64,000 bases of DNA from Mobula birostris (Eukaryota): contig NC_092398.1 of NCBI RefSeq assembly GCF_030028105.1, forward strand, positions 25,311,649 through 25,375,648, read 5' to 3'. A program made the position numbers and the translations under genes. The notes under the pieces were generated by a model, which saw only the letters and a program-made list of their open reading frames with translations, had not been told where the DNA came from and made no database searches. Shown here in pieces: positions 454 through 36,175 of the stretch (positions are counted from its first letter, which is position 1; the number at the start of each line of letters is the position of its first letter).

Positions 454-506
454 TCCCCTTCACTGTCCAGGTCATGCAGTTTTCTCACTGCTGCGATCGG
501 GTAGAA

Positions 507-10368: not shown

Positions 10369-10375
10369 CAAATTA

Positions 10376-12420: not shown

Positions 12421-12592
12421 AACTGAACCTTGCGACCATTTTTGCATGTTTTTATGCTGCCACATGATTGGCTAATTAGATACTTGTATTGAGTATGTGT
12501 ACCTAATTGTATGTGTTGTTTAAACATTAGATACAAGAATTGATAATGTGAGTTAAAAATCTTTTTTTACAATGATCTTTTTATTTTTTCAG

Positions 12593-12847: not shown

Positions 12848-12919
12848 GTGAGTCAAGATAGGAACGTGAGCAGCTCAGTGTACTGACTACCATCAGTCCA
12901 ATAAAGCGTCCCCAGTATG

Positions 12920-14453: not shown

Positions 14454-14735
14454 AAATCGGTGAGCTCTATCTGTACTCAGAGAAACCAGCTGTCTTCGGG
14501 GAGGTAAACACTTTGACCTGTTTCGTCAGCGGCTTTTTCCCACCGGCCGTAATTGTAACGTTGCAGAAGAACAAGAAGCCTGTCAATGGCGAAGTTGACT
14601 CCTCACGCCTCTCATTTGGCAAAGATTGGCGATTTCAAGTGCTCCACTACACATACATCCAGCCAGCAAACGGTGACGTATACTCTTGTAGAGTGCTCCA
14701 TAACATCAGCAAAGAGGAAAAAGTAGTTTACTGGG
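14454..14735 (+). CDS. MHC W-category alpha chain (WA)-like, alpha2 IgC1 exon
   Basis: tttag acceptor and g|gtaaga donor, 282 nt, phase 1/1. Reads EIGELYLYSEKPAVFGEVNTLTCFVSGFFPPAVIVTLQKN...RLSFGKDWRFQVLHYTYIQPANGDVYSCRVLH...VYW. IgC1 cysteines present, plus the beta2m-like LSF-KDW-F motif. Confidence 0.92.
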
Positions 14736-15840: not shown

Positions 15841-16130
15841 TCACAAAGTCACAGAAAAGTACAGCACAGAAGCAGGACCTTTGCCCCATCTAATCTGCCC
15901 ACTCCCCTTGACCGTAGCCCTACCATCCCTGTATCTTTCCAAACTTCTCTTAAACACTGAAATCGAGCTCGCATCCACCACTTCTGCTGGGTGCTTGTTC
16001 CACACTCTCACAGCTGTCTGAGTGAAGAAGTTTCCCCTCATTTTCACCTTTTACCCTTCATCCGTGAGCTCCAGTTGTAGTCCCATCCAACCTCAGGGAA
16101 AAAAGCCTGCTTACATTTAACCCATCTATA
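15841..16130 (-). mobile_element. CR1 3' fragment (intron 3)
   Basis: ORF MRGNFFTQTAVRVWNKHPAEVV, typical CR1 ORF2 C-terminus. Confidence 0.8.
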
Positions 16131-16272
16131 CCTGTTGAAAAGTATATTCAGCCAAGAAGGGGGAACACGAGAAACCCAAGAGGACAATTTAGTTGTGGTA
16201 CCTCATCTTTGTTCAAGCTGATTTTAAAAACTAGTTCCTTGCTTAAAAAATAATTGTGTGCTTTGTTCACAG

Positions 16273-16400
16273 AACCAGAAGAGCAAAGTCGTGCTGAAGA
16301 ACTGGATACAAGCCAGCTTGCTGTTTTGATCTGTGGGCTGATTATAGGAATACTTGGCACAGCAGCTGGACTCTACTTATGTTTTGCATCGTCTGGCTGA
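16273..16400 (+). CDS. WA-like connecting peptide / transmembrane / cytoplasmic exon with stop codon
   Basis: ttcacag acceptor, phase 1. Reads EPEEQSRAEELDTSQLAVLICGLIIGILGTAAGLYLCFASSG*, containing the class II alpha TM pattern C-GxxxGxxGxxxG. Confidence 0.9.
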
Positions 16401-16644
16401 GGCTCTTTGATAATCCGGATCAATACTCCTTCTCAATGAAAAAATAATCCCTGCATTATTTCCCAGTGGTCTGTACCTTGCTTTGTCGCAGTTTTGTGCA
16501 CTCAGATTTGTAATGCATCATTCTCTTCCATCTTATGGTATTGATTTCAAATTCCGCTTTTGAATTTTGGTATCTTTTATTTCATCTGTCAGTCGTCCAT
16601 CTGCTAAATGCAACAGCAATCTGCTTCAGATAGATAAGATCACA

Positions 16645-17270
16645 GGTAGGTCGGGTCCTAAAACAAATGGCACATTCACCTTCATAAATCAAAGTATTGA
16701 GTACAGGAGTTGGGATGTTATGGTGAAGTTGCACAAGACATTGGTGAAGCCTAAACTGGAGTATCATGTTCAGTTCTGATCACCAACCTACAGGAAAGAT
16801 ATCGATAAAACTGAAAGAATGCAAAGAAAATTTACAAGGACTTTGCTGGAAGTTGCAGACCTGAATTAGAAGGAAAAGTTGAATAGGTGAAGACCGTATT
16901 CCCTAGAGCATAGGAGACCAAAGGAGTTTTGAGAGAGGTGTACAAAATTATGAGGGAAGTAGGTGAAATTGTTGCAAGCAGGCCTTTTCCGCTGAGAACT
17001 AGAGGTCATGGCTTAAGGGTAGAAGTGAAATGTTTAAGGTAAAGCTCTTCACACAGCGGGTGGTGAGAATGTGGACGGAACAAGCTGCCAAGGGAAATGG
17101 TGGATGATGGTTTGGTTTCAGCATTTAAGAGAAATTTGGATAAATATGGGTGGGAGGGGTATGGAGGGCTATGGACCGGGTGTGGTTCGATGGGACTAGA
17201 TAAAATAGCAGTTCATCACAGACTAGATAGGCAAAGGAGCCTTTTTCTGTGCTGCAGTGGTCTGACACAT
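16645..17270 (+). mobile_element. CR1 3' fragment
   Basis: SIEYRSWDVMVKLHKTLVKPKLEYHVQF and the CR1 3' end. Confidence 0.85.
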
Positions 17271-18849
17271 CTGCTTCTTCAACCATTCTGCATCTCTGTT
17301 AGGGGAATTAATTTGCTATGAAAATTCAATTCAAGATGGTCACAAATACATTGGACAGGGACTTTGAAATGACTAGGGAATACCTTTATTCATGGACAAG
17401 GTAGAATCACTTGCTAACAGTGAGATCGCCAAGTCTTCCAAAGAATAATACTCATAGCCTTTTTTATACATACACACAGAAATTCAATTACATCAGTCAA
17501 TGTTTAAAAAAAAATCAATCCTGTGTGTCTTATCAATTCCCATGAAAATGCCAGAGGCAGCCTCTTGTCTGCCCACAGCACACAGGGATGGGTTATTAAA
17601 CATCCTTGAAACCAAGATGGATTATTGCAAACATGCTGAGAGCCCAGGCTGAATGCTGAATCTTTATCCATGATATATAGAAGGTTAATTAAATCCTTGG
17701 ATCCAGTAAATAGTTAAACGTACAAAGGTATAGTTTGTTTTATGTGTTAGTATCTGACAAATGAAGGAAAAACCAGGACACTCATTGTAATTGTCAGAAA
17801 CTTGACAGCCCCCAGGGTCCTCCCTACAATTTATGACCTTCAGTGCCTTCATCTTGTTCTTGCAACTGTGTCAGCACTAGGCATATTGCTAATTAAAGGA
17901 AGGTGCAGAATATCTCAGATAGCTTAACGTTTTATTCAGAATTTTCTTCCAGACTGACCTACTTCTGCCCTTCTGCTCTGCTGTGCCGCAAAGCCTTCGT
18001 AGATCATTTCCTTACCACCAATTTCCCTATTTTCACTTCTCTTTGTGAGGTTGGTGAGGTGCATTTCTGGATGTGTGAGCCATTGCTGTTGTTGTAACTT
18101 AAAGCTCATCATTAAATCAGTGGATACAAAAACTCTATACATCTAAAGCAGAAAATAAGTCTCTGCTGTTTGGAGAATAAAAGGTTTCTTTTGCACAAAA
18201 TCTGCAGTTCCTCACTTTTGCAACTACTGCCTCTGTAAATTACCATTTTCTTTTCTCAGGGTAGCTGGTAATAATTTTTTCCTGGGTAGGTGTTCGATGA
18301 GTCAAATTGCACGTTATCCTGCGCTTCAGACAAATGTGACTCCTGTTTAGTATCTTAGTGTTTGACTCTTGCCAAATGATCATGCTGTTATTTACAACAT
18401 ACAAAAGGCACACAATGGTCAGGGATTTACAAAACTAACAACAACTTTGAATTAAAATACAATTACTATAGTCTACAAATCACTCAGTTCCCGGGGGGGG
18501 GGGGAGGGGGTGTTGCACCATTCTCAGAAATCCCCTGTAGTGCTCATAGAGGTTGCATGCTCCCTTTCCGTGGAAGCACTTGCATGAATGTAATACGGGA
18601 AGAGGGATAGTCAGTCAGCTCAAGCAGAGACCTTGACTGCCTGCTGCCTGGACCCGTGAATGGCCATTTTGGCTAGGCCCAGGAACGAGCCTACTGAGAG
18701 AGATCTGAGTGACCCACCACGCCGCCACCACCCCCCCCCACAATATTGCGTGATTGTAGTTGATGAGCACAAGCACGACGTGCAGCCAGAACTTGAGGAG
18801 CAGCTTCTTCAGACATTCAAACAAACAGGCTGCAACCTCTCACACTCCA

Positions 18850-19110
18850 CGTACATTCCGTGGCCACTTTATAAGGTACATCTGCTCGTTCATACAAATA
18901 TCTAACGAATCAATCATATTACAGCAACTTAATGTATAAAACATGCAGAAATGTTCAAGAGGTTCAGTTGTTGTTCAGACCAAACATCAGAATGGGGAAG
19001 AAACGTGATGCAAGTGACTTTGACCGTGGAATGAATGCTGGTGCCAGACGGGTGGATCAAGCATCTCAGAAGCTGCTGAGTAAAGCCTTCCCCAGCACTG
19101 AGCGCATCTA
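18850..19110 (+). mobile_element. Tc1/mariner remnant
   Basis: ggccacttta TIR-like start. MGKKRDASDFDRGMNAGARR matches a Tc1 transposase N-terminus. Confidence 0.75.
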
Positions 19111-19756
19111 CATGAAATGCTGTTGCAGGGAAGCAGCATCTATGATTAGGGACTCCCACCACCCAGGTCATGCTTTCTTCTTGCTGCTGCCATCATGAGG
19201 AAGGTACAAGAGCCTCAGGATAACTTCACTCAACTTCACTTCCCCATCATTGAAATGTTGCCACCACCAGTGGACTAATTTTCAAGAACTCTTCAGCTCA
19301 CGTTTTTGATATTTATTCTTATTTATTATAATTGCTTTCTTTTTTTTGTATTTGCAGAATTTGTCTTTTGCACACTGGTTGAACGCCCAAGTTGATTTGG
19401 TCTTTTATTGCTTCTGTTATGGGTATTTTATGCCCGTCAAAAAGAAATCCCAGTGTTGACATGTATTTCGATAATAAATGTATTTTAAAATTTGATCTCT
19501 GTTGGAGTTTCATGCACAACAGTTTACAGAGAATAGTATAAAAAAGAAAAAAAAAATCCAGTGACCGTCAGTTCTGTGTGCAAAAACGCCTTGTCACTCA
19601 GAGAGTTCAGAAGAGCATGGCCGTACTGTTTCAAGCTGGCAGGAAGGTGACAGTAATTTAAATAACCATATGTTACAACAGTGGGGTGCAGAAGAGCATC
19701 TCTGAATGCACAGCGTGTTCAACCTTGGTCAATAGCAGCAGAAGACCACAAATATG

Positions 19757-19813
19757 CACTCAGTGGCCACTTTATTAGATACAAACGATATCTAATAAAG
19801 TGGCCAATGAGTA
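19757..19813. mobile_element. Tc1-derived mini hairpin (TIR-only)
   Basis: cactcagtggccactttattagata...tatctaataaagtggccaatgagt. Related copies occur near 11400, 28211 and 43683-44100. Confidence 0.75.
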
Positions 19814-20459
19814 TACTTTAGTTTTATGAATCATCTTGCTGTTGGATGACAAAGTGTGTTCAGATTTTATTTGAATCCACAAACATTCTTCATTCTTACA
19901 AGCAGGCATGGCAACAGGAAGATTTTGCTCAGAGGTTAATTGCTCCTTAAGGATGTAGGATTCAGCATCTCTCAATAACCTCTCTGCAGGCAGTGGTCTC
20001 CAAAACTACAGTTAAACATAAGCACAAGAAATACTGCAATCCAGAGCATTGGTATTGGAGAGGTCCAAGGTGAGGTTCACGAGAATGATCCTGGGAATAA
20101 AAGAGTTAATGCATGAGGAGCATTTGAAGGCTCTGGGTCTATAGTCACTGGAGCTTAGATGGATGGGGGAGGGGTGGGTGGGACGTCATTGAAACCTACT
20201 GGATATTGAAAGACCTGGTTGGAGTGGATGCGGAGAGGATGTTTCCTAGACTAGGGGAGTCTAGGTCCACAGGGCTCAGACACAGAGTAGAAGGATGTCC
20301 TTTTACAACAGAGGAGTTTCTTTTGCCAAGGGGTTGTGAATCTGTGGAATCCATTGCTACAGTTGGCTGTGGAGGAGAAGTCATTGGATATATGAGTTTA
20401 AAAAGGAAGGTTGCTTCCAACGGCTTTCTTTTGGATCAGGACTACAGAGCGGCGTGGTA

Positions 20460-22218
20460 GTTGAATTCTGAAGGAAGGCAGTTTTATTAAAAACTTCTTC
20501 AAGTGCAAGAAGGACGAGACTGTGCAGGCGCGTGACATAACAGGACAGGGCGGAGAGTTTAAAAAAGAGACCACCCTATACAGCGGGCAGCTGTCGGAGC
20601 GGGCAGCGGAGTGAGTGGTAGCAGAGTGTAGGGCTTTCACTTCAACGGGCTTCGGCGGTAAACGGGAAGAGGCAAGAGCGAGGCACCAACTCTTTTTTTT
20701 TTCTGCCCTCCCCCTTTTGCGAATTGGCCCAAACAGACAGGAACAGCAGGGCTCACACAGCTAATGGTACGAGCTAACGGTTTAAAAAGTTCATCTGTTT
20801 GGCAAGGTAAGTGGGTGAGCAGACTTATTTTTCCCATTTCATTCCTGTAGAATTAGATAGCATGCATGCTGGGTTTGTGCTTTGCTCAGGGTGTCAGATG
20901 TTGGAATCCTGGGAGACCTCCAGCCTCCCTGATGGCCACATCTGCGCTAGGTGCACCGAGATGCAGCTCCTCAGAGACCGTGTTAGGGATCTGGAGCTGC
21001 AGTGAGATGACCTACTGCTTATCAGGGAAAGTGAAGAGGTGATAGACAGGAGCTACAGGGAGGTAGTCATCCCTAGGCTACAGGGGTCAGAACAAATATC
21101 TTGTTCCAGATCTGTTGAGGGAGATGACCTAACAGGGGACGCCCATGGTGACCAGGTCTCTGGCACTGAGCCTGGCACTGTTGTGCAGCAGGAAAGGAGG
21201 GAGAAGAGGAATGCGGTAGTCATAGTGGATTCCATAGTCAGGGGAATGGACAGGAGATTCTGCGAGCCTGATAGAGGTACCTGCATGTTGTGTTGCTTCC
21301 CAGGTGCCAGGGTATGGGATGTCTCGGATCGGGTCCAGAATATTCTGAAGGGAGAGGGCGAGCAGCCAGTTGTCTTGGTACATGTTGGTACCAGTGACAT
21401 AGATAGGACAAGGGAGGAGGTCCCGAAGAAAGATTTCTGGAAGTTAGGAAGGAAGCTGAGAAGCAGGACCTCCAGGGTAGTAATCTCGGGATTGCTACTT
21501 GTGCCACGTGCTGGCGAGGGCAAGAATAGTAAGATCAGGCAGATGAATGCATGGCTGAGAGAGCGGTGCAGGGGGCAGGGTTTCAGATTCTTGGATAATG
21601 GGGATCTCTTCTGGGGCAAATATGACCTGTTCAAAAGGGACAGGTTACGCCTGAACCCGAAGGGGACCAATATCCTTGCGGGAAGATTTAAGGAGGGTTT
21701 AAACTAATTTGGCAGGGCGATGGGACCCGGAATGATAGAGCGGAGGAAGGGGAAAACAGAAACAAATCTAAGATAGTGAGCAGTAAAAATGTCAGGAAAG
21801 ACAAGCAGGTGATGGGGCAAATTTGTAGCCATCGGGATGAGTTGCAGTGCAATAAAGTTGCAGTGAAATCAAAGCGAGAAGTACCAAATACTGGTCTTAA
21901 GGTGTTATACTTAAAAGCATGCAGCATAAGGAATAAGGTGGATGATCTTGTCATACAGCTACAGATTGGCAGATATGATATTGTGGCCATCACTTAGACA
22001 TGGCTAAAGGATGCATGTCTCTGGGAGCTGAACATCCAAGGATACACAGTGTATCGGGAGGATAGGAAGGTAGGCAGAGGGGGAGGCGTGGCTTTATTGG
22101 TAATAAATGATATTAAATCATTAGAAAGAGGTGATATAGGATCGGAAGGTGCAGAATCTTTATGGATTGAGCTAAGAAATCGCAAGGGTAAAAGGACCCT
22201 GATGGCAGTTATTTATAG
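20460..22218 (+). mobile_element. CR1 LINE 5' part: 5' UTR, ORF1 (zinc finger plus SGNH esterase), start of ORF2 APE; cut at a hAT TIR
   Basis: CSGC...CARC finger. VDSIVRG/CFPGARV/VHVGTSDI esterase motifs. NKVDDL...DIVAIT and YREDRKVGRGGGVAL endonuclease motifs. Confidence 0.92.
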
Positions 22219-23272
22219 CAGGGGTCCCCGACCTTTTTTGCACTGCGGACCGGTTTAATATTGACAATGGAAATGAGGAGTCAACGTTTCGGGCCGGAAC
22301 CCTTCGTCAGGACTGAAGAATGAAGGAGGGGGAAGGATTTGAAGAATGCTTGTAGGTTCGGTTGAAAGACCAGTAATTTGAAGGTCAAAGGGTGGGGGAG
22401 GGGAAGCATCGACATCATAGGCAGAAAAACAATGGGTAGTAGAAGAAAGAGGCGGAACCATGAGGCAGCTGGGGGAGGGGGCAGAGTGAAATAGGGATAG
22501 GGGAAGGGAGGGGGAGGGAAGTTGGAGAATTCTATGTTCATACCAAGGGGCTAGAGACTACCTAGACAGTATATGAGGTGTTGCTCCTCCAACCTGAGTT
22601 TAGCCTTATCATGGCAGTAGAGGAGGCCATGTATGAACATATCTGAATGGGAGTGGGAAGCAGAGTTGAGGTGGGTGGCTACCGGGAGATCCTGTCTGTT
22701 GTGGCGGACGGAGTGGAGGTGCTGGACGAAGCGGTCCCCCAATCTGCGTCTGGTTTCACCGATGTAGAAGAGGCCGCACCGGGAGCACCGGATGCAATAG
22801 CTGACTTTTGTTATGTTATGTTACTTTGATCCCAGCATCTACAGATTATTTTGTGTTTAATATTGACAATATTCTTGCGGACCGGCCGACCCGGGGGAGG
22901 GAGGGGGTGGGTGGTGGTGGGGGGAAGGGTTTCCAACGGACAAGCGGAGCGGTGAAATACGTTGGGTGTATCCCTAACAAAAAGACTACAATGACCATGA
23001 AGCCTTGCGCGGGCATCAGTGCGCATGCGTTTACGTGCCAATTTCATTTCTACAAACAACAGGAGTTCTGCAGATGCTGGAAATTCATGCCACACACATC
23101 AAAGTTGCTGGCGAACGCAGCAGGCCAGGCAGCATCTGTAGGAAGAGGTGCAGTCGACGTTTCAGGCCGAGACCCTTCGTCAGGAGTAGTCATTTCTACA
23201 AATGGTTTTTGGCGATTCTGTTCGGGGGTGGGGGGGGAGTGTTAATCACGACCGGAATATAGGTGGCTAATA
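22219..23272 (-). mobile_element. Partial inverted hAT MITE (3' end only), interrupted by Penelope-like pieces
   Basis: TIR caggggtccccgacc at 22219. 22855-23272 is the reverse complement of the ~24160-24410 portion of the adjacent copy. Confidence 0.8.
22266..22805 (-). mobile_element. Penelope-like element fragment (GIY-YIG)
   Basis: GDRFVQHLHSVRHNRQDLPVATHLNSASHS, the C-terminal part of a PLE GIY-YIG endonuclease. Confidence 0.8.
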
Positions 23273-24440
23273 CAGGGGTCCCCAACTACCGGGCCGCAAA
23301 GCAAGCGCTACCGGGCCGTGAGGAAACGATATGATTTGGCGATATGAGTCAGCTGCACCTTCCCGCATTCCCTGTCACGGCCACTGTTGAGATTGAACGC
23401 ATGCGAGGTCATTACCCGCGTGTCATCCATGTCAGTGTGGGTAGGAGATCAACTCCTCGAGCTTGCAAATGACGGCGGGCTGAAAGGTATGTTTGACATG
23501 ACCTCTCTGTCGGCATTCCGGATCAAAGTCAAGGCTAAATATCCTGAGATAGCCACGAAAGCACGGAAAACGTTGCTTTCATTTTCAACATATCTCTGCA
23601 ATTAATGCAACAAAAACTAAATTGCGGAATAGACTGGACATAAGGAACCCCTTCGAGTATCGCTGCCTCCCATCTCCCCTCGATAGGACCGTCTTGTCGT
23701 AGGGAACAAGTAGTCAGCCCAGGGTTCCCCCTGATTCAGCGATATTGGTGTGTTGCAATGATTTTATATGTTCATACGGGGAAATATGTGCTGTGTGTTT
23801 AATATCCAAACGTTACTTAAAATGTTATGATGCTATTGACTTATATAACCATATAACAATTACAGCACAGAAACAGGCCATCTCTGCCCTTCTAGTCCGT
23901 GCCGAACGCTTACTCTCACCTAGTCCCAACGACCGGCACTCAGCCCATAACCCTCCATTCCTTTCCTGTCCATATATCTATCCATTTTTTCTTTAAATGA
24001 TAATATCGAACCTGCCTCTACCATTTCGTTCAACACTTACTTCAAGCTCCCCTGCCCTTCCCTGATAATTGACATCACTATATTCATGCGAGGAAAATAT
24101 GCACTGTGTGTTTAATATTAAATTCGTTAGAGAAACCCTTTTAGAAACGAAATTGAGTGTATTAGCCACTTATCACCTATATTCCGGTCGTGATTAACAA
24201 CAACCCCCCCCCCCGAACAGAATTGCCAAAAACTATTTGTAGAAAAAAAATCGGCATGTACACGCATGTGCACTGGTGCCCGCGCAAAGCTTCATGGTCA
24301 TTGTAGTCTTTCTCGGGTAAAACCAACGTATTTGACTACCACTCTTGTCTATTGGCAACCCTTCCCCCGGATCGGCCGGTCCGCAAGAATATTGTCAATA
24401 TTAAACTGGTCCGCAGTGCATAAAAGGTTAGGGACCCCTG
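23273..24440 (+). mobile_element. Non-autonomous hAT element (same family as 2867-4058), no matching TSD
   Basis: TIRs caggggtccccaac / ggttagggacccctg and transposase remnant ORF 23387-23605. Flanks ggctaata versus tattaagg differ. Confidence 0.88.
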
Positions 24441-24945
24441 TATTAAGGGATTACGAAGAATGCCACAAAGGCTTTAATACAAAGAAAAATCGCTGAGCAT
24501 CATATTAGTTTGAAAACGTTTGATGATGAGGTGCTAGATAGGTTTCCAATGAGTAATCTGGAAATGCAGTTACATCTTGAAACAAATAAAGTTAAAGCAA
24601 TTAGAAGCTGATTTGGAAAGAAGTCGGTTAGGAGCTGAAAATAAACAGAAGGAATTCGAGGCTAGTGTGGCCCATAAAATAAGGGAATTTAAAGATAGAG
24701 AAGCTGAAAACCAGAGGAAATTTGAGCTAGAGATGGAGAAATTAAAGTCCGGGAATCAGTCTTCTTGTACTAAGAAACAGTTTATTGCTAGTGGTGAGGT
24801 TATTTTGGCTCCTCGATTTAATGAAGCTGAAGTGGACAAACATTTCCAGATTTCGAAATTACTGCTCTGAGTTTAGGGTGGCCGAAAGAGCAATGGCCAG
24901 TGATGTTACAAAGTATAATTAAAGGCAAGGCACAACAAGTTTACA
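24441..24945 (+). pseudogene. Gmr1-like gag fragment, inverted duplicate of ~9775-10280
   Basis: ORF 24577-24870 is nearly the same as ORF 9742-10143. Confidence 0.88.
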
Positions 24946-25310
24946 CACATCAAAGTTGCTGGTGAACGCAGCTGGCCAGGCAGCATCTCTAGGAAGAGGT
25001 GCAGTCGACGTTTCAGGCCGAGACCCTTCGTCAGGACTAACTGAAGGAAGAGTGAGTAAGGGATTTGAAAGTTGGAGGGGGAGGGGGAGATCCAAAATGA
25101 TAGAAGACAGGAGGGGGAGGGATGGAGCCAAGAGCTGGACGGGTGATTGGCAAAAGGGATATGAGAGGATCATGGGACAGGAGGTCCGGGAAGAAAGATG
25201 GGGGGGGGGGGGAGACCCAGAGGATGGGCAAGGGGTATATTCAGAGGGACAGAGGGAGAAAAAAGAGAGTGAGAGAAAGAATGTGTGTGTAAAAATAAGT
25301 AACAGATGGG
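24946..25310. mobile_element. Penelope-like fragment replacing the deleted Gypsy body in the right arm
   Basis: cacacatcaaagttgctggtgaacgcag... family, also seen at 23092 and 37440. Confidence 0.75.
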
Positions 25311-25995
25311 GACAGCTATATGTGTGACCATGCTTCCAGCGCCAACCCACAACTTACTAACCCTAATGTGTACGTCTTTGGAATGTGGGAGAGAACCCAT
25401 GTGGTCATGGGGAGAACATACAAATGCTGTAAAGACTGCGGCAGGAATTGAACCCAATCACAGGGACTGTAAAGAGTTACGCTACCATGCTGTCTGTGAG
25501 AGGAAACAGTTCATGAAAATGCTCACCAAATTCCTGGTCTGAACTGTTAAAGATCAAGATGGGGTAGCATGGTAGTGCAGTGCTTTATAGTACAGGCGAC
25601 TTGGGTTCAATTCCTGCCACAGCCTGTAAGGAGTTTATATGTTCTTCCTATGCCCCATGGGTTTCCTCCCACATTCCAAAGATGTACCAGTTGATAAGTT
25701 AATTGGTTATTGTAAATTTTCTCGTGATTAGGCCAAGATTAAATTGGGAACTGCTGGGTGGTGCGTATCAAAGGGCCAGAAGGACCAATTCCATGCTGTA
25801 TCACAATAAATAAATAAAATTCTGAAGCTTAAATCCTGAAACAGCCCTAAACACCATTTCTTAGTGTTTCATAGCAAATAGTTGGTCTCAGTTGTTTTTG
25901 CTGCTAGTCCCCAACACTGCCTCAGTCTCAAACACTGACTCTATTTGTCTCCAAGTGTCTGAACCGGAACCAACTTGTAGACTTAATATTGTTGT

Positions 25996-26827
25996 TGTGA
26001 CGAAAAACCAAGTTATCAGAAGATTGATGCTGATGAGAGAGATAAGAGAGACAAATGGAGAAGCGTTCAAAATGTTATTGAGAGAGGAGAGAGATTAACG
26101 AAAAGAGACACGGTTCCGAGTATTGACAGACCAGTTGCTTTGAACCTGAACTGTTTGAAGTTTGATGGACAGGCGATACCCCAGCAGGGGGATAAAAGGA
26201 ACAGGTTCGCTAAGGCAAGACAGACACCACGAGATCACGAGATAACGAGACCCCGGAAGTGCGGTGTGCCCCCGCAAGTTGGTGAAAGTTTGGAGGTCTG
26301 GTCGCGGGAACTGACTGTAGACACACGGGGTGAAAAGGTAGGATCGGCGAGAACCTGGTGTGTGTGTCCGCCCTTGCCTGGGTGCTGGGTTCACCACGGA
26401 AGAATGGTCGTATCCGGAACGGAGGGGTCACAGTCGGTGACCACAGAAGACGTTAAAACGGTTTGCCCAAAAGCTAACTGCGAAGAACAAAGGTCTGTTT
26501 GAATCAGAATTTGCATATTCTCTCTCTCTCTCTCCCCAACGGCACAACAGTGATTACTGCGAACTGTACTCAGCTGAACTGAACTCTGCGTCACTTGAGA
26601 CTGATCATTTTACCCCTAGACTGCGATAGAGCTTGATTGATTCCTATTATCCTAGTTCTGTGTACATGTGTGTTTTATCATTGCTAACCCGTTGCATTTA
26701 TATCCTTACGATTAGAGTACTGTGTTACTTATTTCTATAATAAAACTTTCTTAGTTCCAGTAATCCAGACTCCAACTAAGTGGTCCATTTCTGCTGGTTT
26801 GGCAACCCAGTTACGGGGTACGTAACA
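25996..26827 (+). mobile_element. Solo LTR (Gypsy-like)
   Basis: tgtgac...gtaaca with 4-bp TSD ttgt. The empty site is present in the left arm near 2480. Confidence 0.88.
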
Positions 26828-28737
26828 TTGTTAACTCCCTACATTTTAAATCACACTTGTGGCATGCTCACAAAAAACAACTCTGTCCACGAGCTGATCA
26901 TCATTCACTCCATCCTGCCTTCCGCCTGGCAAAACCCCCACCCATGCTGCTGTCAACCCCAGATTTTACTGTTACACACCTTCCTCATTGACATCCCTCG
27001 TTTTACCTTCCATAAACACAGCCAACAGTTTCTTGTGGTGTACCTGAACACTGTCCTGTCTCAAAGACATACAGATTATGATTAGTAAATTGTGAGTAAG
27101 CTGTTGCCTCAGGAAGTGTGACCCCACCACCCCCCAGCACATCATTGGACTGTGTTGGCCATTGATGAAAATGACCCATTTAACTGTATGTTCAACGTAA
27201 ACATGACAAACAAAGCTAATCTGCCTTTAAGACTTGCAGTTAAATCTAGTTGAGTGATAAAGGAAGACCCAGTTCGCCAGCTGGCGCTGTAATGCAGATC
27301 TCTTACAACCCGAGAGGGATCATAAAGTGTTTCACAAAAGTGACGTTATGATTCCAGTTCAGTTCACACAAGATGGCCCAGCAAACAACACAACCAATGA
27401 CAATGTCCTGTTGACAGTTCACAAATATGCTTCTTTTACTCCTTCGTATTTCAAATGAAGTTCCACTATTAATCGGCGTGCCATTGGAACCTGTAATTTA
27501 CATTTTGATGGTGTGTTTTTGGGCTAGTTGAGCAATCTGGTGCTTTATTGTCTCCAAGGAAATTCAGTGAGGTTTGGAGCAGAGTGTGTGGCCTGGAAAC
27601 ATGATCGACACTGTTGCTTTTCTCCAACTGAAACATTCAGAACGGTTGAAGTCAACGAGGCTGAGCATCAAGGACGAGCAGAAGTTTAACCTTGCTTCAA
27701 CCTGCTGGTGTATGATTGGTATTCCTCTCCCTCTTGTTAGCTTCTGTCAGAGGGAAATGCAGGTGTCCTGGGATCAACATTGCAAGGATCAATTGGAGAT
27801 TCATTTTGGGAGACTTTGCGGTTCATATTGGATAAGTTCCTGGATTCTGGTTACTCTTTTTTTTTTTAAAAAAGCCATTTTTGAGTGCTTTCTCCAGGGC
27901 AATCTATGCGATCTGGGTCGCTTCGGCGAAGAATGCTATACCCTGCAGAAATGTTTTCTGTATATACACTTTGATAATAAATGTACTTTGAATATTAGAA
28001 TTACTTGCATTATACCAATTTTTTTATGAGTATGACTTCTTAGGCTGAGGATGACATGCTACCTCAGATTGTGAATATTTTTAACGTGGAATGGCTCTTG
28101 TACATGATGTTGACAAGGGTGACGTCTTGGTCAATGGTGAGGAATTCCAATGCAACTGGAGAGCAGACCTTGAGTATGGACATTAAACACAAACACACAA
28201 ACACCAACTCACACTCAGTGGCCACTTTATTACATATCTCCTGTACCTAATAAAATAGACACTGAGTATATGTTCATGGTGTTTTGCTGCTGTAGCTCAG
28301 CCACTTCAAAGTTCGACAGTTTGTGCATTCAGAGATGCTTGTCTGCACACCACTATTGTAATGCATGGTTATTTGAGTTACCGTTGAGTCAGCTTAAACC
28401 AGATTGGACATTCTCCTCTGATCTCAAAGTCAAAATAAAATTGATTATCAGAGTACATACATGTCAGCACATACAGCCCTGAGATTCATTGTCTGCAAGC
28501 ATACTTGGAAAATCTATAGGATAGCAACTGCAAACATCAGGAATTGTTAACTATAAATAAACTGTGCAAATGCAGACACAAATAAATAGCAATAAATAAT
28601 GAGTATTAAATAACAATATAACAGAGTCCTTAAGTGAGTGTAGCTATCCCCTCTTGTTCAACAGCCTGAAGTTTGAGGGATACTAACTGTTCTTGAACCT
28701 GGTGGCGCCAGTCCTGAAGCACCTGTACCTTCTACCT

Positions 28738-28956
28738 CAGTGGTTCCCAACCACCGGGCCGCAAAGCATGTGCGAGGAAACAGTATGATTTGGTGATATG
28801 AAATGATATGAGTCAGCTGCACTTTTCCTCATTCCCTGTCACGCACTGTTGAACTTGAACACCACCAACCCCCCTGCCCAGCCCACCATCAGCCGGTCCG
28901 CAAGAATATTGTCAATATCAAACCAGTCCGCAGTGCAAAACAGTTTGGGGACCCTG
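28738..28956. mobile_element. hAT MITE, duplicate of 507-724
   Basis: TSD ttctacct/ttctaccc. Confidence 0.85.
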
Positions 28957-30375
28957 TTCTACCCGATCGCAGCAGTGAGAAAAGTGCGTGATCTGGACAG
29001 TGAAGGGGATGTTGTATCGTGGATGAAATCACTGGAGAGACAGAGTCACTGGTAGATACAAAGCAGCTTCTTTATTCGACACAACAAGGTACAGCAGGCA
29101 TCTTACGGACGGAGATGCTTTCCACAGAAAGGTCTGCTAGCTCAGTGTGGGCTTGATATTTATATGCTAAACACAAAGGCAATCGCTACTTAAAAAGTTA
29201 TAGACAGTGCATAGACAATGCTTCCTATTGAAGCTACATACAAAATATCACACCATCCTTTCCTCCCGACGCCAACATGTCTGGTTTAATATCCACAGCC
29301 TTTAGGAATTTAAGTTAAGTCTATGATACATTTATTTGGCATTTTCTGTATTGACATAGAAGACAATTAATATTTATAATGTATAGATAATACTGTCTTC
29401 GAAACTACAGCATCAGGTCAAACTACGGCGCCAGAAGCATCTGGTATTCCCACCTTTTTGGAAGCCCATTGTGGTGGACTCAATCCACAGTCCTTTGTCA
29501 AACAGTTAAAATAGAAGTCTGGTGGCCAAAGTCATTTAAGTGTAAACAAATCATCTACCCAAAAAAAAACTCACTCTAACAGTCCCTCCTCTTGGCCTTC
29601 CAGGACAAAAATTAAATTTATATCAGGAAAGGCCAACCTAGGAGGATCTGCTCAAATAGGGCAGCAAAAATGCCCTGTCTTGAATTCCCCCCCCCGCCCC
29701 AATTTTATGTACCTCGATATCTATCCTAGCATTACCTAATTGCTAGTTACCAAATGTTAAGCAGTCTTTAGGAATGCGGCTCCTTTGGTGTGCCTGCTCT
29801 TTCCCTGCAGGCTGACTGCAGCTTAATTACATTCATTTGTCTTCAGCCCTTTATCCTCTGGTTGCTGAAACTCTCCTTCCAGGAGCACCCACAGACTCTC
29901 TCATCGATGTACAGGAAAGGGTTGTGGTGGCCTCTACATAAATGTCTGCAAGGACCTCTCCCCGGTGGCACCCCCTTCCAAAGTGTCCGGTCGATCACTG
30001 GCCCAACTGCTGAATCGGGCCCAGCTCCTCAGACCGGGTGACTGCTTTCAGATACCGAGTGCAGTCTGAAATGCCATCGAAGTGGTGGAACTTGCCGTCT
30101 CTGCTTTAACACAAAAATCCCTCCCCGTCTATTTCCCAATAAATTTCTATGTTATGCTATAAAATTAATCATCTACCTTCAGCAACCAGCCTTCTTTACA
30201 GAGTACCATCATCATCACACTTTAGCAGGCTATTCATGGTTTTCCAACACGTTCTCAGTGTCTTCTGCCACGCTCTCGGCGTTTTCTGCCCTTGCGTTTT
30301 CTCCGGGTATGTTTCCATCAGCTGTGGCCAGGTCTGGCATGGCCGGCTGGTGCTCCTCTCTTTGGTTCTCTGTAA

Positions 30376-31300
30376 TTACATGATTACATGGTTACTGTGT
30401 ACACTTGATCCCCCACTCTGTCTGTGGGAGCAACAAGAGGGTGAGTTGTATGCTTTAACCTGAGTCCAGTGTTTCCACTGGCTGCCTCGCCGAGTCTGTA
30501 CACAGACACACGTATCATTGGTTAAGAGTACCGTCCGTGGTCCTATCCACCTGGGGGCAAACTCTGGCCTTTCTGGCAGCACCCTCACCATAACCTGGTC
30601 GCCAGGCTGTGGAAGAACTATCCCCTTTCCCTCTGGCTCTTTCTGATCAGTGACTCACTGTTGTTGTTTCGCTCAGTCTCATCAGGATTCCTGGTAATAC
30701 ATCAACCCATGTCTTTCCTGTCTCAGCTATAGCTTTCTTGATTGTTCTGTTCATCCTTTCTACCATCCCTGAACTCTGGGGGTGGTAGGGTACGTGGAAC
30801 CGTTGTCGAATCCCTAGTAGTTGGCACATTTCCTTTATCACTTTCCCAGTGAAATGTGCTCCCTGATCTGAATCCACCTGAACTGGGGTTCCCCACCTTG
30901 GGAGGATTTCCTGAACTAGGATTCATGCAGCGGTGCGGGTGGTGCAGTCCCTTGTTGGGAAAGCCTCTACCCACCGAGTGAAGTGGTCCATGATTACCAG
31001 ACAGCAACTTTTCCCTCTGCTTTTTGGCAGGGGCCCTGTGAAGTCTATCTGGATGTTTTCCCAGGGTCCCCTCAGCCGAGGCTGATTTGCCAGATGTAGC
31101 TTTCTGCCCTTACCAGGGTTATGCTGGGCACAAATGACATAACGGCGGCAGAATTTCTCAACATCCCCACCCATCCCTGCCCACCACCAGTCCTGCTGGA
31201 GGGTTGTGATCATGCTCTGCCTTTCCTGATGCATTGCCCCATGATAAAACTTTAGTAGTATCTGTCTAATACAGGGTGTGACCACTGCGACTCTTTCCAC
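30376..31300 (-). pseudogene. Integrase (frameshifted)
   Basis: HGAMH...C..C zinc finger, WENIQIDFTGPLP, SDQGAHFT, YHPQSSGMVERMN, RWIGPRTVLL. Confidence 0.9.
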
Positions 31301-31656
31301 TCTATGTGTCCAGCACCCATCTGGTCCCTCCTTTGCTCCTTTTCTCCTCCATTGTGCCTTTTCTCCTCCATTGTTCCTTCTCTTCTGCCTCTACCTCTTC
31401 ATATAATTTTACTCAGCTGGCTTCTGTCGTTTCCTCCTGCACACTTGCAATTTCAATTGCCTCTTGTTCCTCTCTTGCCTTATTCGCAGTAATGTCTGCC
31501 CTTGGAGGAACTGGGAAAACGTTATGTTCTGGAGTGGCCGCAGTCTCTCTGAGTATCGTCTGGTGTTTTTGTTCCTTTGCTTTACCCTGAACAGCGGTCA
31601 GTGTGTCAGTTTGAATAGGGTCCTGCTTAGGGGGTTTATACAGACCCTCCTCTATT

Positions 31657-32981
31657 TTAACTGGGTTTATCTTTACCTTGCTTGTGGATTCTGTTGGTTG
31701 TATGTGTTCGCTGCCTCCGACTCGTCCATTTTATTTCTCCCTTTCCCAAATCTATAACAGCTCCTGCTTCCCTTAGGATGACTATTCCAAGGATCGTGCC
31801 CTCATTATTTGGACATACCCAGAAATACACTGGAAGCTGCACTCCCCCAGTTTCTAGTATTTGCTTCCCGCTTCTTTCTGCTTTTACTGTTTTCCCTCTT
31901 ACACCCCTGATATAACTGGCCTGTCCGGTTGTTGGTAAGGGTAAGTCTGTTATCGATACCGATGCCCCTTTGTCCACTAACATATTGCATTGCCGTCCCC
32001 CTAACAATGCTATTGTGTACATCCGTGAATCACCAGCGCTGCCAGTGGAGCCCGCTGCGACATCTTTTTCTGGCGCCGTTACTAACTCTTTAATCTGATC
32101 AACAGTCAAACTGTTTGCTGATGGGGTGAGTGACTGGGTGTATGCCGTGACCTTCATCTGGGTTTTCCCCCACACTTTTGTACACTGTCTCCAGCCATGT
32201 CCCAATAGGCCACAGCTGTAGCATATCAACTCCTTCAGTGTCTTATACCTGGTACGGCAGTCCTTTGCTAGGTGCCCCAGCTGCTGGCAAGCAAAACAAG
32301 CTCTCCGGGACATCGCAGCTGCATCCACTATACCCACTTTACGATTTCTCTTGCCTTTTCTGTGGTCTATTTCACTGGCCCACGAAACTATCACAGAGTA
32401 GGTGGACCCCACCGTTATGCTTAAATCTAAAACTTCTTGGTGGGCTGAGCTCAGGCCTTCCTTCAGCATTTTTAGGAAGACTGGTCGTCCCTCCCTGGAT
32501 TATCCAACCCTGAATACTCCTCGTACACTTGATATTTACGTTCTGCATAATCCATGGCTGTCTCGTCAGCTTTTTGAATCACTGCCATTATCGTTCCCCA
32601 GTTACTCTTGCCTCCACCCAGCCGCTGCCTCACTTCCCCTTTAAAACAGCGATATCTTTCTTCATTACTGGCGCTCCCAGTAGTTGCCCATGTTCCATCC
32701 CGCACCCCCTGGGCCATCCTGTCCCACATATTCTTCGGGCACTTTGCTTTCACTAACACATGTATATCTTTAGGGTGCATCTGGTGAATTTCAACCATTT
32801 CCTCCAGTCTGCGCCAGAACTGTGAATTCCCACAGGCGACTTTAAGTGAGGGCAACTCGGACAAAATGCTCTGTTTCTCCCCGGGGGTGAAGGGCTTATG
32901 AATAGTCGTAATCAAGGTCAAGGGCTGGCTGGGATCGCCAGGGTTCTCAACCTGACGCTGCCTGACCTCAATAGGTGCCAC
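31657..32981 (-). pseudogene. Gag (two CCHC knuckles) plus degenerate aspartic protease
   Basis: CFACQQLGHLAKDC and CYSCGLLGHGWRQC. LVDKGASVS and ILGIVIL protease motifs. Confidence 0.88.
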
Positions 32982-33497
32982 CCTGGTTGATCAATCTGGG
33001 TAAAACCTCTCCCTGAGATATCCCCACACTAATTCCCACACTACGCAAAATATAAAAGACGGGTAGCAGTTAAACAGTACATAGTTAAAACCGCAGAGTA
33101 TGTATTCCACAATCTGCCACTTGTGAGTACCTGAACTCATGATGCCCGCTGTATTCCTGTGCATCACACTTGCAAACACATACACTAAAATGCGGCTTCC
33201 CGAATGAGTACAGACGCCCCTACTCTGGCGCCTCGAACCGTACCATTGGTTACCAGCTTTCGCAACTGGTGGTCCAAGTCTCACCAAGTTAACATGCAAA
33301 GATTCCTCACTTATATAAACACACATGCACACGCACACACTACTTTAATATCTACCAGTTCAGCTCTCCACATTCGTGATACCTCGTGTTCCCGCGTGTC
33401 CACCAACCGAACAGATCCAAGTGTGAGTGTTATTTTAGAAAAATACTCACCAACTTAAGACTGCTAGGAACGCTGGCCACACGACGGGTCACAAAGT

Positions 33498-33515
33498 ATC
33501 CCACTTCTGACACCA
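33498..33515 (-). other. Primer-binding site complementary to tRNA-Leu 3' end
   Basis: tggtgtcagaagtgggat, 2 nt from the 5' LTR. Confidence 0.88.
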
Positions 33516-34723
33516 AACGTTGTATTGTGGATGAAATCACTGGAGAGACAGAGTCACTGGTAGATACAAAGCAGCTTCTTTATTCGACACAACAAGGTAC
33601 AGCAGTCGTCTTACGGACAGAGACGCTTTCCGCAGAAAGGTCTGCTAGCTCAATGCGGGCTCGATATTTATATGCTAAACACAAAGGCAATCGCTACTTA
33701 AAAAGTTATAGACAATGCATAGACAATGCTTCCTATTGAAGCTACATACAAAATATCACACCATCCTTTCCTTCCGATGCCAACAGGTCTGGGTTGGTAT
33801 CCACAGCCTTTAGGAATTTAAGTTAAGTCTACGATACATTTATTTTGCATTTCCCGTGCAATTAATATTTATAATGTATAGATAATACTGTCTTCGAAAC
33901 TACAGCATTAGGTCAAACTACGGTGCCAGAAGCATCTGGTATTCACACCTTTTAGGAAACCCACTGTGGTGAACTCAATCCACAGTCCCTTGTCAAACAG
34001 TTAAAATAGAAGTCTGGTGGCCAAAGTCATTTAAGTGTAAAGAAATCATCTACCCAAAAAAAACCTCACTCTAACAATTGATGCTGATTTTCTATGGCAA
34101 CGTTTCATGTTGATGTATTGCACAAGGGGGTATTGAGGCCCAGGTCTTGCAGTTTACTGATTAGTTTTCATTTTGAGCGTTTACTGATCAGCCTCTCATA
34201 TTGAACGAGGCAAAAGACTTGAACTCGTGAACGAGGCAAGTGAAAATACAAGGCATAGAAAGCTAAGGAGCCCGCGCCGTTGAATATAATTAAGACGAAG
34301 AGAGATGTTTGAGATCTATAGGGAGTCACGAGTGATAGAGAACAGGCAGGAAATCAAGAACAAAATCATATGTTTTGGACATTGATAGTGGGATAAGTAT
34401 TGGCCCTAGGATATTGAGAAAAATTCTCTACTCTGTATGTAGCATGTCTAATGTCTCACCCAAAAATAACTCACCCACCTATATACATGCACAAAGCCTC
34501 TAAGCCCCCTCTAAACACCTTAAAGTTATGCCCCTTCATCTTAGCCATTGCCACCCTGGGACAAAGTCTTCCATTGTCCACCCTATCAATGCCTCTTATC
34601 TTGTACATCTTTGTTAAGTCACCTCTCATGCTCCTTCGCTTCAAAGAGCAAATCCCTAGCATGCTCAACCTCGCAAGACATGCTCTCTAATCCTGGTAAA
34701 TCTCCTCAGCATACTCTCTAAAG

Positions 34724-35522
34724 CAGGGGTCCCCAACTTTTTTAGCACCATGGACCGGTTTAATATGTTTAATATTGACAATATTCTTGTGGACCAGCCG
34801 ACCGAGGGGGGGGGGCGGGGGGGGGGTGCAGGTGGGGGCGTGTTCAAGTAGAGTTAAACTCAGCTCAACATGTCTTTTACAATTAGGGTTGTCAACTTTC
34901 TCACTCCCAAATAAGGGACGAAATTAGCAGTCAAATCCCAGGACACTTTACCCCTGGAAAGACTACCATGACCATGAAGCCTTGTGCGGGCACATGTGTG
35001 CGTATTCGTGTAAGTGTCAATTTTTTCCCACAAATCGGTTTTGCCTTCATCTTCTCAACTATACTGTACATACATTATTTCTACTTTATATAGGCTGTGT
35101 ATTTATCATATCATTCCTGCTTTTACTATATGATAGTGTTATTTTCTGTTTTATGTGTGGGTTGGTATGACTTGGTAGGTTATTTGTTGGGTCTGGGAAG
35201 GCTCAAAAATTTTTCCCATATAAATTAATGGTATTTGCTTCTTCGCTTCACGCCATTTCGGCATGAAAGGTTTCATAGGAACGCTCTACCTTAGCGGGGG
35301 AAATACAGGACAAGGGCGGTCCCGTATGGGACAAACCAATTTAGCCCAATATACGGGATGTCCCGGCAAATATGGGACAGTTGGCAACCCTATGTTCAAG
35401 TTCAACAGTGCGTGACAGGGAATGAGGAAAGGTGCAGCTGACTCGTATCGTTTCCTCGCGGCCCGGTAGCACATGCTCTGCGGCCCGGTACCGGTCCGTG
35501 GCCTGGTGGTTGGGGACCGCTG
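34724..35522 (-). mobile_element. hAT MITE inserted in a CR1 3' fragment
   Basis: Perfect TSD ctctaaag (34716-34723, 35523-35530). TIRs caggggtcccc / ggggaccgctg. Confidence 0.9.
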
Positions 35523-35769
35523 CTCTAAAGCTTCCACATCCCAAATTAAATATCCTGATATTAAACTTGGCTCTGTAATAAGGCGACCAGAACTGAACAC
35601 AATACTCCAAGTGTGATCTAACCAGGAAGTTTAACCCTTAAACAACAATACCCAAAATAGTATGGGGCCAGCAAGATCCAGCCTGTAACACCCCACCCCC
35701 GACCTGGTTGATGACCCCAGCAATGTGAAATCTGCAAGATCCCTCAATCTGCAGCAAGAAGGGTGATCC

Positions 35770-36175
35770 CCGCGACAGGAATCGACTCACCGGCTGCCGA
35801 GCTGTGAGTTCCCGAACGGGCGACGAGGAGCAGGAGGAGCGCACAGGCGGCGCCATATCGACCCATGGTTGCGACTGTGCCAAAAGCAAAGAGCGGCTGG
35901 AGGTAAGAGGCAGGAGGCAGGAGGAGGCGACGCCCCCGCCATTCTCCCCGCCCAACGTACCGCCCTAGTCCCAGCCCCGGCCTCGCTCCTCCGCTTCTGG
36001 CAACGCCGAAGAGAGTGAAGGAGCGGCCCGGCCGCTGGCGGAGTCACGTGCCGGAGAGAGGGCGGGGAGTGTCTCTGGCGGGAAGCCGCGGCAGCCAATC
36101 AGCGGCGGGCGGCCGGATGACGAGCGCATGCGCAGTCTCTGGCAGGTGCCGGCTCGCCGGGTCTCGGGATTGGCT
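35770..36175. promoter_or_regulatory. CpG-island promoter / first exon
   Basis: Sharp GC/CpG enrichment against the AT-rich background. GC boxes, gtcacgtg E-box, ccaatcag (CTGATTGG on - strand) at 36095-36102, tgacg at 36118-36122, NRF1-like gcgcatgcgc. Confidence 0.8.
35791..35866 (-). CDS. Signal-peptide (leader) exon, candidate WA exon 1 copy
   Basis: Kozak gcaaccATGg. MGRYGAACALLLLLVARSGTHSSAA plus 1 nt, then donor g|gtgagt. Phase 1 matches the alpha1 exon (g+ag = Glu). Confidence 0.8.

What the first reader, a model, noticed from the sequence alone, without database searches (positions are those of the whole stretch)
35791..35866. Orphan leader exon on the opposite strand, 19 kb beyond the WA stop codon
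Seen: a textbook signal-peptide exon (Kozak ATG, MGRYGAACALLLLLVARSGTHSSAA, GTGAGT donor, phase 1) that would join WA exon 2 in frame. It points towards WA on the wrong strand, and no downstream exons are visible on its own strand. Much of the DNA following it (29473 down to 24441) is an inverted copy of sequence upstream of WA exon 2. Inference: it is a duplicate of WA exon 1, and the functional copy should lie roughly 6-7 kb left of position 1 on the + strand.
Basis: partly seen in the sequence, partly recalled or inferred. Interest (0 to 1): 0.82.

Follow-up and report, generated by a model that had tools for sequence, protein, structure and literature searches.

The report
Orphan first exon of manta WA gene
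This is a real, intact-looking first exon and promoter of a W-category MHC alpha-chain (WA) gene of a manta ray that an inverted duplication left facing the wrong way, so it is a leftover of ordinary gene-family rearrangement and not a new kind of element.

Summary
Observation confirmed. At 35866-35791 (- strand) there is a Kozak ATG, a 25-residue signal peptide, a GTGAGT donor and phase 1. The peptide is 24/25 identical to the leader of the one annotated Mobula birostris WA protein. The exon and its CpG-island promoter align to the sawfish WA exon 1 and promoter.

Each WA exon occurs once in the window: exon 1 on the - strand, exons 2-4 on the + strand. Arm A (1-10280, +) and arm B (29473-24441, -) are collinear copies of WA intron 1, about 5-7% diverged, and they bracket the WA body. 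Arm B ends exactly at the terminus of a transposon that lacks a target-site duplication. A WB-like exon lies to the right on the + strand, the canonical head-to-head side.

Best reading (about 0.58): this is the 5' relic of a second, mirror-image WA copy whose body was lost. A + strand twin would then sit 1.8-6.4 kb left of the window. The left flank could not be reached, so this stays untested. Main rival (0.25): it is the gene's only exon 1, split off by inversion, as an earlier agent of this scan read it on this same window.

Known gene family, known kind of rearrangement; modest interest.

The parts
35791..35866 (-). Coding part of WA exon 1: start codon, 25-residue signal peptide and first base of the junction codon; GTGAGT donor follows at 35790-35785
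   Evidence: sequence; 24/25 identical to the leader of P0001; 79% identical to sawfish leader plus donor, 35839-35762; in-frame join to exon 2. One private change, W8C, at a position that is Trp in all 8 other batoid WA leaders aligned there.
35867..36175 (-). 5' UTR and conserved WA promoter in the only CpG island of the window. Contains a Y box CTGATTGG (36102-36095), GCGCATGCGC (36133-36124), CACGTG (36050-36045) and an out-of-frame upstream ATG at 35942
   Evidence: CpG o/e 0.85-1.0 against a window mean of 0.41, and no other island; 36115-36013 aligns to the sawfish WA/WB intergenic promoter, Y box included (74%, E 6e-13); a LINE endonuclease fragment starts at about 36180 and ends the island.
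34077..35790 (-). Leader-proximal part of intron 1 of this copy, with a TIR transposon at 34724-35522
   Evidence: 34186-34455 matches sawfish WA intron 1 (L001 12528-13240) in the expected order; the transposon has a perfect 8-bp target-site duplication.
29011..34076 (-). LTR retrotransposon inside intron 1; LTRs at 33519-34076 and 29011-29581, with gag, protease and integrase remnants
   Evidence: direct repeats; ORFs; zf-CCHC, RVP, rve; arm A carries an LTR at the same flank, so the insertion predates the duplication; LTRs 5.6% diverged.
24441..29473 (-). Inverted-repeat arm B: a copy of WA intron 1, continuous with the leader above it
   Evidence: collinear blocks against 1-10280; 4.9-8.6% substitutions, 19 indels; holds the sawfish-conserved intron block.
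23273..24440 (+). TIR (hAT-like) transposon whose right terminus is the inner end of arm B; it has no target-site duplication
   Evidence: flanks are GGCTAATA and TATTAAGG, whereas the two other copies have perfect 8-bp duplications. Homology to arm A stops at the first base of the transposon.
1..10280 (+). Inverted-repeat arm A: WA intron 1 continuous with exon 2, cut by the window edge inside an LTR (1-452). It contains a later TIR insertion (2867-4058) and most of an LTR retroelement (4406-11212)
   Evidence: RT and integrase; 2293-2626 matches sawfish intron 1 (13464-13824), then 11253-11398 and 12519-12581 match 13898-14141, just before exon 2.
10281..24440 (.). Single-copy spacer between the arms; it holds the only WA exons 2-4
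12593..12847 (+). WA exon 2 (alpha1 domain), phase 1 at both ends
   Evidence: 92% identical to P0001.
14454..14735 (+). WA exon 3 (C1-set Ig domain); carries N159D (14597-14599), which removes an invariant NSS sequon
16273..16439 (+). WA exon 4 (connecting peptide, membrane anchor, tail); has a 6-bp deletion and TGG>TGA at 16398-16400
62008..62172 (+). WB-like exon on the head-to-head side of the leader
   Evidence: 62% amino-acid identity to an exon of the gene that lies head-to-head with sawfish WA (L001 7261-7097, - strand). A search of the ORF alone found no relatives.

Best explanation
The feature is a genuine promoter and first exon of a W-category MHC alpha-chain (WA) gene, followed by most of that gene's first intron. 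It is the 5' relic of a second WA copy, made when a WA unit was duplicated in mirror orientation. Its own exons 2-4 were later lost in a deletion that starts at a transposon end. What remains is a promoter-leader-intron stump pointing at the tail of the neighbouring WA gene. In the assembled orientation it cannot be spliced to any WA exon. Its still-intact CpG-island promoter could at most drive a non-coding transcript that runs antisense into the WA body. On this reading the neighbouring WA gene keeps its own first exon on the + strand, 1.8-6.4 kb left of the window. Shown here: its identity as WA exon 1 and promoter, the inverted duplication, the transposon-end breakpoint, and the absence of in-strand partner exons. 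Inferred: the existence of the + strand twin, the former completeness of the second copy, and any transcription.
For: Identity. The leader is 24/25 identical to P0001 and has the same Glu junction codon. Exon plus donor and the promoter align to the sawfish WA locus. The DNA below the leader follows the order of sawfish intron 1.

Duplication. The arms are collinear, 1-10280 against 29473-24441, with 6.7% substitutions. Each arm has its own private transposon insertions. The LTR element predates the event, because arm A has an LTR at the same flank.

Twin more likely than not. (a) The tract copied was at least 9 kb, which is long for a breakpoint duplication. (b) The inner end of arm B is, to the base, the terminus of a transposon without a target-site duplication, while two sister copies have perfect ones. 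That fits a transposon-adjacent deletion of a once longer copy, not a random break. (c) WA exons 2-3 keep intact frames and splice sites. They carry 2-3 private residue changes, against about 8 expected if they had drifted since the duplication; the A-lineage divergence is about 2%, giving Poisson P of about 0.01-0.04. (d) Head-to-head WA/WB pairs are the norm (PMC8713811; sawfish; skate), and a WB-like exon lies on the + strand to the right. The stump therefore looks like half of a whole pair.
Against: The + strand twin was not seen; arm A is cut by the window edge. Every WA exon occurs exactly once in 64 kb, which is also what a simple split gene would show. The WA body has pseudogene-like lesions: a premature stop, a 6-bp deletion and loss of an invariant glycosylation site. 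No protein for it exists in the public annotation; P0001 is the only M. birostris WA protein found. The constraint argument is weak. It rests on amino-acid counts and on a rate estimated from 859 polarised sites, and it ignores gene conversion from paralogues. No WB leader is recognisable next to the promoter.
Confidence: 0.58

Rival explanations
1. It is the only first exon of this WA gene. One inversion, with its breakpoints duplicated, turned exons 2-4 away from their promoter and leader, so the gene is split and dead. This is the reading of the earlier agent on this window.
For: Each exon is present once, and together they make one complete, in-frame WA reading frame. The leader sits in the canonical head-to-head position beside WB-like sequence. 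The body shows a nonsense mutation, a deletion and loss of an invariant sequon. The leader has lost an invariant Trp. No annotated protein exists. Nothing unseen needs to be assumed.
Against: It needs a breakpoint duplication of at least 9 kb. The inner breakpoint coincides with a transposon terminus that lacks a target-site duplication, which a random staggered break does not predict. Exons 2-3 are better preserved than neutral decay since the event predicts.
Confidence: 0.25
2. The 14-kb spacer that holds exons 2-4 flips between the two arms by recombination, recently or as a polymorphism. In the other orientation the leader at 35.8 kb serves the gene, about 13.7 kb upstream of exon 2.
For: The WA body lies exactly between inverted arms. 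A 237-bp tract (A 599-835 / B 28627-28863) is perfectly identical in arms otherwise about 5% diverged, which suggests exchange between the arms. In the flipped state the gene would span 17.6 kb, comparable with the 14.4 kb of P0001.
Against: Apart from that one tract, the longest identical runs are under 90 bp, which is poor substrate for homologous exchange. The leader's loss of the invariant Trp argues against recent use. No second haplotype or read data were available.
Confidence: 0.08
3. The orientation of the spacer is an assembly error between the inverted arms, and the real gene is intact on the - strand.
For: Inverted repeats that flank a segment are a classic source of misorientation.
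Against: The arms differ at about 1 site in 15-20 and by many indels and private insertions, so long reads should tell them apart. The window has no gaps. The exon 4 lesions would remain in either orientation.
Confidence: 0.04
4. It is exon 1 of a different live gene on the - strand, whose other exons lie beyond the window or were not recognised.
For: The promoter island is intact, and the start codon and donor are perfect.
Against: Leader, junction codon, promoter and downstream intron are all WA-specific. No domain-bearing - strand ORF lies in the 33 kb downstream. The next exon would have to be more than 35 kb away, past an opposite-strand WA body.
Confidence: 0.04

Closest known systems
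WA genes of the W-category MHC (Okamura et al. 2021, PMC8713811); nearest sequence is M. birostris P0001, annotated 'RLA class II histocompatibility antigen, DP alpha-1 chain-like'
   Same: Leader peptide 24/25 identical; phase-1 donor; same junction codon; promoter and intron 1 homologous to sawfish WA; placed head-to-head with WB-like sequence, as published for sharks, teleosts and coelacanth.
   Different: Not in one transcription unit with alpha1, alpha2 and membrane-anchor exons. The only such exons nearby are on the other strand. An invariant Trp of the leader is replaced by Cys.
Gene fragments left by inverted segmental duplication and later deletion in MHC and other multigene regions
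   Same: Two collinear inverted arms with private transposon insertions, a single-copy spacer, and one arm ending in a truncated gene copy.
   Different: The breakpoint sits at a transposon terminus without a target-site duplication. The promoter island of the fragment has not decayed.
Human F8 intron-22 inversion, where an intronic repeat pairs with inverted extragenic copies (recalled from general knowledge, not tested here)
   Same: An intronic segment has an inverted copy outside the gene body. Exchange between the two would separate 5' exons from 3' exons.
   Different: The arms here are about 5-7% diverged and no recurrent inversion is shown. Here the first exon would be split off, not the last ones.
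Rearrangements made by aberrant transposition of hAT elements such as maize Ac/Ds: adjacent deletions and inverted duplications (recalled from general knowledge)
   Same: The breakpoint lies exactly at a TIR terminus and the target-site duplication is missing on that copy only.
   Different: Neither the transposase nor the event can be reconstructed. The element family is only hAT-like, judged by its 8-bp duplication.

Membership tests
W-category MHC alpha chain (WA), exon 1 | Leader peptide homologous to that of bona fide WA proteins | tested here: met
   24/25 identical to P0001, and alignable to stingray and sawfish WA leaders.
W-category MHC alpha chain (WA), exon 1 | Phase-1 donor that joins the alpha1 exon in frame with the family's junction residue | tested here: met
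   G|GTGAGT plus AG at 12593 gives Glu, as in P0001.
W-category MHC alpha chain (WA), exon 1 | Promoter and intron 1 orthologous to a WA locus of another species | tested here: met
   Sawfish L001: promoter 74%, exon plus donor 79%, intron blocks in the same order.
W-category MHC alpha chain (WA), functional gene | Exon 1 on the same strand as, and upstream of, the alpha1, Ig and membrane-anchor exons | tested here: not met
   Exon 1 is on the - strand at 35.8 kb. Exons 2-4 are on the + strand at 12.6-16.4 kb, and there are no - strand copies.
W-category MHC alpha chain (WA), functional gene | Transcript that joins this exon to WA exons | not testable with these tools
   No expression data were available. 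No database protein carries the Cys-8 leader.
Head-to-head WA/WB pair | WB gene on the opposite strand upstream of the WA promoter | tested here: inconclusive
   A WB-like exon lies on the + strand 26 kb to the right, but no WB leader was found. In sawfish the two start codons are 280 bp apart.
Inverted segmental duplication | Two collinear arms in opposite orientation that are not explained by independent copies of one transposon | tested here: met
   Five collinear blocks span several different repeats and one non-repeat intron block conserved in sawfish. The arms have private insertions with target-site duplications.
MHC-type S-X-Y promoter module | Y box (inverted CCAAT) with X boxes at fixed spacing upstream | tested here: inconclusive
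   The Y box CTGATTGG is present and conserved in sawfish. A CGTCA half-site lies 15 bp upstream, but no clear X1 or S box was seen. The comparison with HLA-DRA is from memory only.

The most novel reading that the evidence does not exclude
The WA body sits in an invertible 14-kb spacer between mirror-image intron arms. Germline recombination between the arms would switch which promoter-leader module serves it, or would turn it on and off if there is only one module. That would be a heritable flip-switch for an MHC-like gene.
Probability: 0.08. Interest if true: 0.65.

Novelty: new member of a known kind. Interest (0 to 1): 0.3.

Why it matters
It settles what the 'orphan' exon is and gives a concrete structure for one W-category locus in a ray: promoter, leader, conserved intron block, inverted arms and a transposon-end breakpoint. 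It corrects a point in the scan's own notes. Batoid WA/WB pairs are head-to-head, as published for other fishes, and the 'tail-to-tail' pairs are more simply read as neighbours in an array. For annotation it says where to look for the missing first exon of this WA gene, and warns that exon 1 and exons 2-4 here should not be joined into one gene model. It is not a new mechanism. Fragments like this are the usual debris of MHC-family expansion.

Tried and rejected
1. Reaching the left flank failed by four routes. The P0001 locus gave gene coordinates but no DNA because the file is too large. The scan's notes near position 1 hold nothing to the left. An exact-ORF look-up near the window edge is not on record.
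2. I looked for a recombinant solo LTR in arm A as proof that the arm extends. The visible 452 bp are uniformly like the 3' LTR, so this is uninformative.
3. I searched the WB-like ORF (61855-62178) against 1.8 billion representative proteins and got only one spurious repeat hit. The exon was identified instead by tblastx to the sawfish locus.
4. I looked for a WB leader on the + strand from 36 to 62 kb with strict and loose criteria, and by homology to the sawfish WB leader. Nothing convincing turned up. An ATG-led 22-codon phase-1 stretch at about 36127 runs into a LINE fragment and has no hydrophobic core, so I rejected it.
5. The skate locus L002 matched the window only through repeats.
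6. The idea that the inverted copy is just two insertions of one retrotransposon is rejected. The arms span several repeat types and a non-repeat conserved block, in the same order.
7. P0001's gene span of 14.4 kb fits every model once transposon insertions are allowed for, so it does not discriminate between them.

Full report
**What the window is.** The window is vertebrate DNA rich in transposons and has no gaps. On the + strand it holds three exons of a W-category MHC alpha-chain (WA) gene:
- exon 2, 12593-12847;
- exon 3, 14454-14735;
- exon 4, 16273-16439.

All three have good splice sites. Their closest database relative is the single annotated Mobula birostris WA protein, P0001. It is 92-96% identical in exons 2-3 and about 85% in exon 4. 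Next closest are stingray, sawfish, skate and shark WA proteins. The family was described by Okamura et al. 2021 (PMC8713811).

**The observation.** That G plus the AG that opens exon 2 makes Glu, and P0001 has exactly ..SSAA-E-TDKLAV.. at that junction. The peptide is 24/25 identical to the P0001 leader.

A scan of both strands of the whole window for exons with an ATG, a hydrophobic core, phase 1 and a GT donor returns this one convincing leader. The exon lies in the window's only CpG island, with o/e 0.85-1.0 against a mean of 0.41.

In the sawfish WA locus (L001), the promoter and the leader exon with its donor both align to the manta sequence. The promoter, including its CTGATTGG Y box, matches 36115-36013 (74%, E 6e-13). 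The leader and donor match 35839-35762 (79%, E 2e-12). So this is a real WA exon 1 with its promoter, not a chance ORF.

**Its own strand.** tblastn with WA proteins finds each WA exon exactly once in the window: exon 1 on the - strand and exons 2-4 on the + strand. Ten - strand ORFs between 3 and 26 kb have no Pfam domain. In this assembly the leader therefore has nothing to splice to.

**The inverted copy.**
- 1-970 matches 29473-28492.
- 971-2485 matches 28299-26828.
- 2481-2868 matches 25996-25581.
- 4059-4334 matches 25590-25311.
- 9772-10280 matches 24947-24441.

These are not two insertions of one element. The blocks are collinear and cross several repeat types. They include a non-repeat block (A 2293-2626 and its B copy) that is 72% identical to sawfish WA intron 1.

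The order of sawfish-homologous pieces is informative:
- Below the leader, 34186-34455 matches sawfish 12528-13240.
- Next come the arms, which match sawfish 13464-13824.
- Then, in arm A only, 11253-11398 and 12519-12581 match sawfish 13898-14141, and exon 2 follows.

So the - strand copy is promoter, exon 1 and most of intron 1. The + strand copy is the rest of intron 1 and exons 2-4. The two overlap in the arms, and the WA body lies between the arms in a 14-kb single-copy spacer.

Substitution divergence of the arms is 6.7% overall, 4.9-8.6% by block, with 19 indels in 3.6 kb. Each arm has private insertions. One example is the TIR element at 2867-4058, which has a perfect 8-bp target-site duplication and is absent from arm B.

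An LTR retrotransposon (29011-34076; gag, protease and integrase) lies between the leader and arm B. Arm A begins inside an LTR at the same flank, so the element was inserted before the duplication.

I could not see that DNA. Within the window, a mirror duplication that includes the leader and an inversion with duplicated breakpoints give the same picture. Four indirect points lean towards a twin.
1. The tract copied was already at least 9 kb long (arm A minus later insertions). That is long for a breakpoint duplication.
2. The inner end of arm B (24441) coincides to the base with the right terminus of a TIR element (23273-24440) that has no target-site duplication. The two sister copies have perfect ones. 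This is what a transposon-adjacent deletion of a once longer copy leaves. A random break would not land there.
3. WA exons 2-3 seem too well preserved for neutral decay since the event.
   - Polarising arm differences with the second LTR and with sawfish gives about 2% change on the A lineage (17 of 859 sites).
   - Neutral decay over that time would give about 8 amino-acid changes and about 1 indel in exons 2-3.
   - Polarising the differences from P0001 with eight outgroup proteins leaves only 2-3 private changes and no indel. Poisson P is about 0.01-0.04, and weaker if the rate is at the low end of its range.
4. WA/WB pairs are head-to-head in published species, in sawfish with start codons 280 bp apart, and in skate. 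A WB-like exon lies on the + strand to the right of the leader. It is at 62008-62172, with 62% amino-acid identity to the exon of the sawfish head-to-head neighbour. So the stump looks like half of a whole pair.

**Evidence against a twin.**
- Every exon is present once, and together they would make one perfect WA reading frame.
- The body has a TGG>TGA stop, a 6-bp deletion beside it, and N159D, which removes an invariant NSS sequon.
- The leader has lost a Trp that is invariant in eight other sequences.
- No protein for this gene exists in the annotation.

I put the twin at about 0.58 and the split-gene reading at about 0.25. A flippable or recently flipped spacer gets 0.08. Its support is one 237-bp identical tract in arms otherwise about 5% diverged. 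Misassembly gets 0.04 and a different gene 0.04.

**How it works now.** In the assembled orientation the exon cannot contribute to a WA protein. The promoter island is undecayed, which suggests it is still kept unmethylated. If active, it would produce RNA that runs through the intron copy and then antisense across WA exons 4-2. That step is inference only.

**Relation to earlier notes of this scan.** An agent working on the WA body of this same window (s1-145103) read the leader as the gene's own first exon, inverted 19 kb away. That remains my main rival. The statement that rays keep WA and WB tail-to-tail (s1-145137) is not supported by the loci I could check. Sawfish and skate pairs are head-to-head. 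The stingray case I could list, a WA body with a convergent WB 7 kb downstream, is what neighbouring head-to-head pairs in an array look like.

**Verdict.** This is a correct and careful observation of a real WA exon 1 and promoter stranded by an inverted duplication. The gene family and the kind of rearrangement are both known, so interest is modest.

Noticed in passing
window 23273-24440, with sister copies at 2867-4058 and 34724-35522: A roughly 0.8-1.2-kb TIR element family (termini CAGGGGTCCCCAAC..., 8-bp target-site duplications CTATAAAG and CTCTAAAG). The copy at the arm B junction alone lacks a duplication, so a transposon end marks the rearrangement breakpoint.
   Followed up: partly
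window 599-835 and 28627-28863: A 237-bp perfectly identical tract inside inverted arms that otherwise differ at about 1 site in 20. It is a possible gene-conversion or exchange tract between the arms. It has no sawfish match.
   Followed up: partly
window 2293-2626 (copy in arm B at about 27020-25850); L001 13464-13824: A non-repeat block of WA intron 1 is 72% identical between manta and sawfish and is kept in both arms. It is a candidate conserved intronic regulatory element.
   Followed up: partly
window 35942-35940 (- strand): An upstream ATG in good context, out of frame with the leader; its ORF ends at the TGA that overlaps the splice donor. Stingray gene models (P0005, P0006, P0008) read the homologous ATG in frame, as a 21-residue N-terminal extension.
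   Followed up: partly
window 16386-16400 and 14597-14599: The WA body lesions cluster. A 6-bp deletion, Leu>Ser and TGG>TGA fall within eight codons at the membrane/tail boundary, and N159D removes an N-glycosylation sequon that is invariant in eight batoid WA proteins.
   Followed up: yes
window 36180-36400 (+ strand): A LINE endonuclease fragment (..WVELRNKKG..YNRPPNS..) abuts the promoter island on the WB side, where sawfish has the WB leader 280 bp from the WA start codon. No WB leader is recognisable anywhere from 36 to 62 kb.
   Followed up: partly
window 4406-11212 (- strand): A near-complete LTR retrotransposon (RT and integrase; LTRs 4406-5265 and 10376-11212, 7.7% diverged) lies in WA intron 1. 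It is older than the duplication, because arm B keeps a fragment of it.
   Followed up: yes
L001 (sawfish) 9640-10138; L002 (skate); stingray locus of P0002: Batoid WA genes have a C1-set neighbour head-to-head (280 bp apart in sawfish, 3.2 kb in skate). The stingray model P0002 lacks exon 1 and has a convergent MHC II beta-like gene 7 kb downstream. The 'tail-to-tail' pairs noted earlier in this scan therefore look like neighbours in an array.
   Followed up: partly
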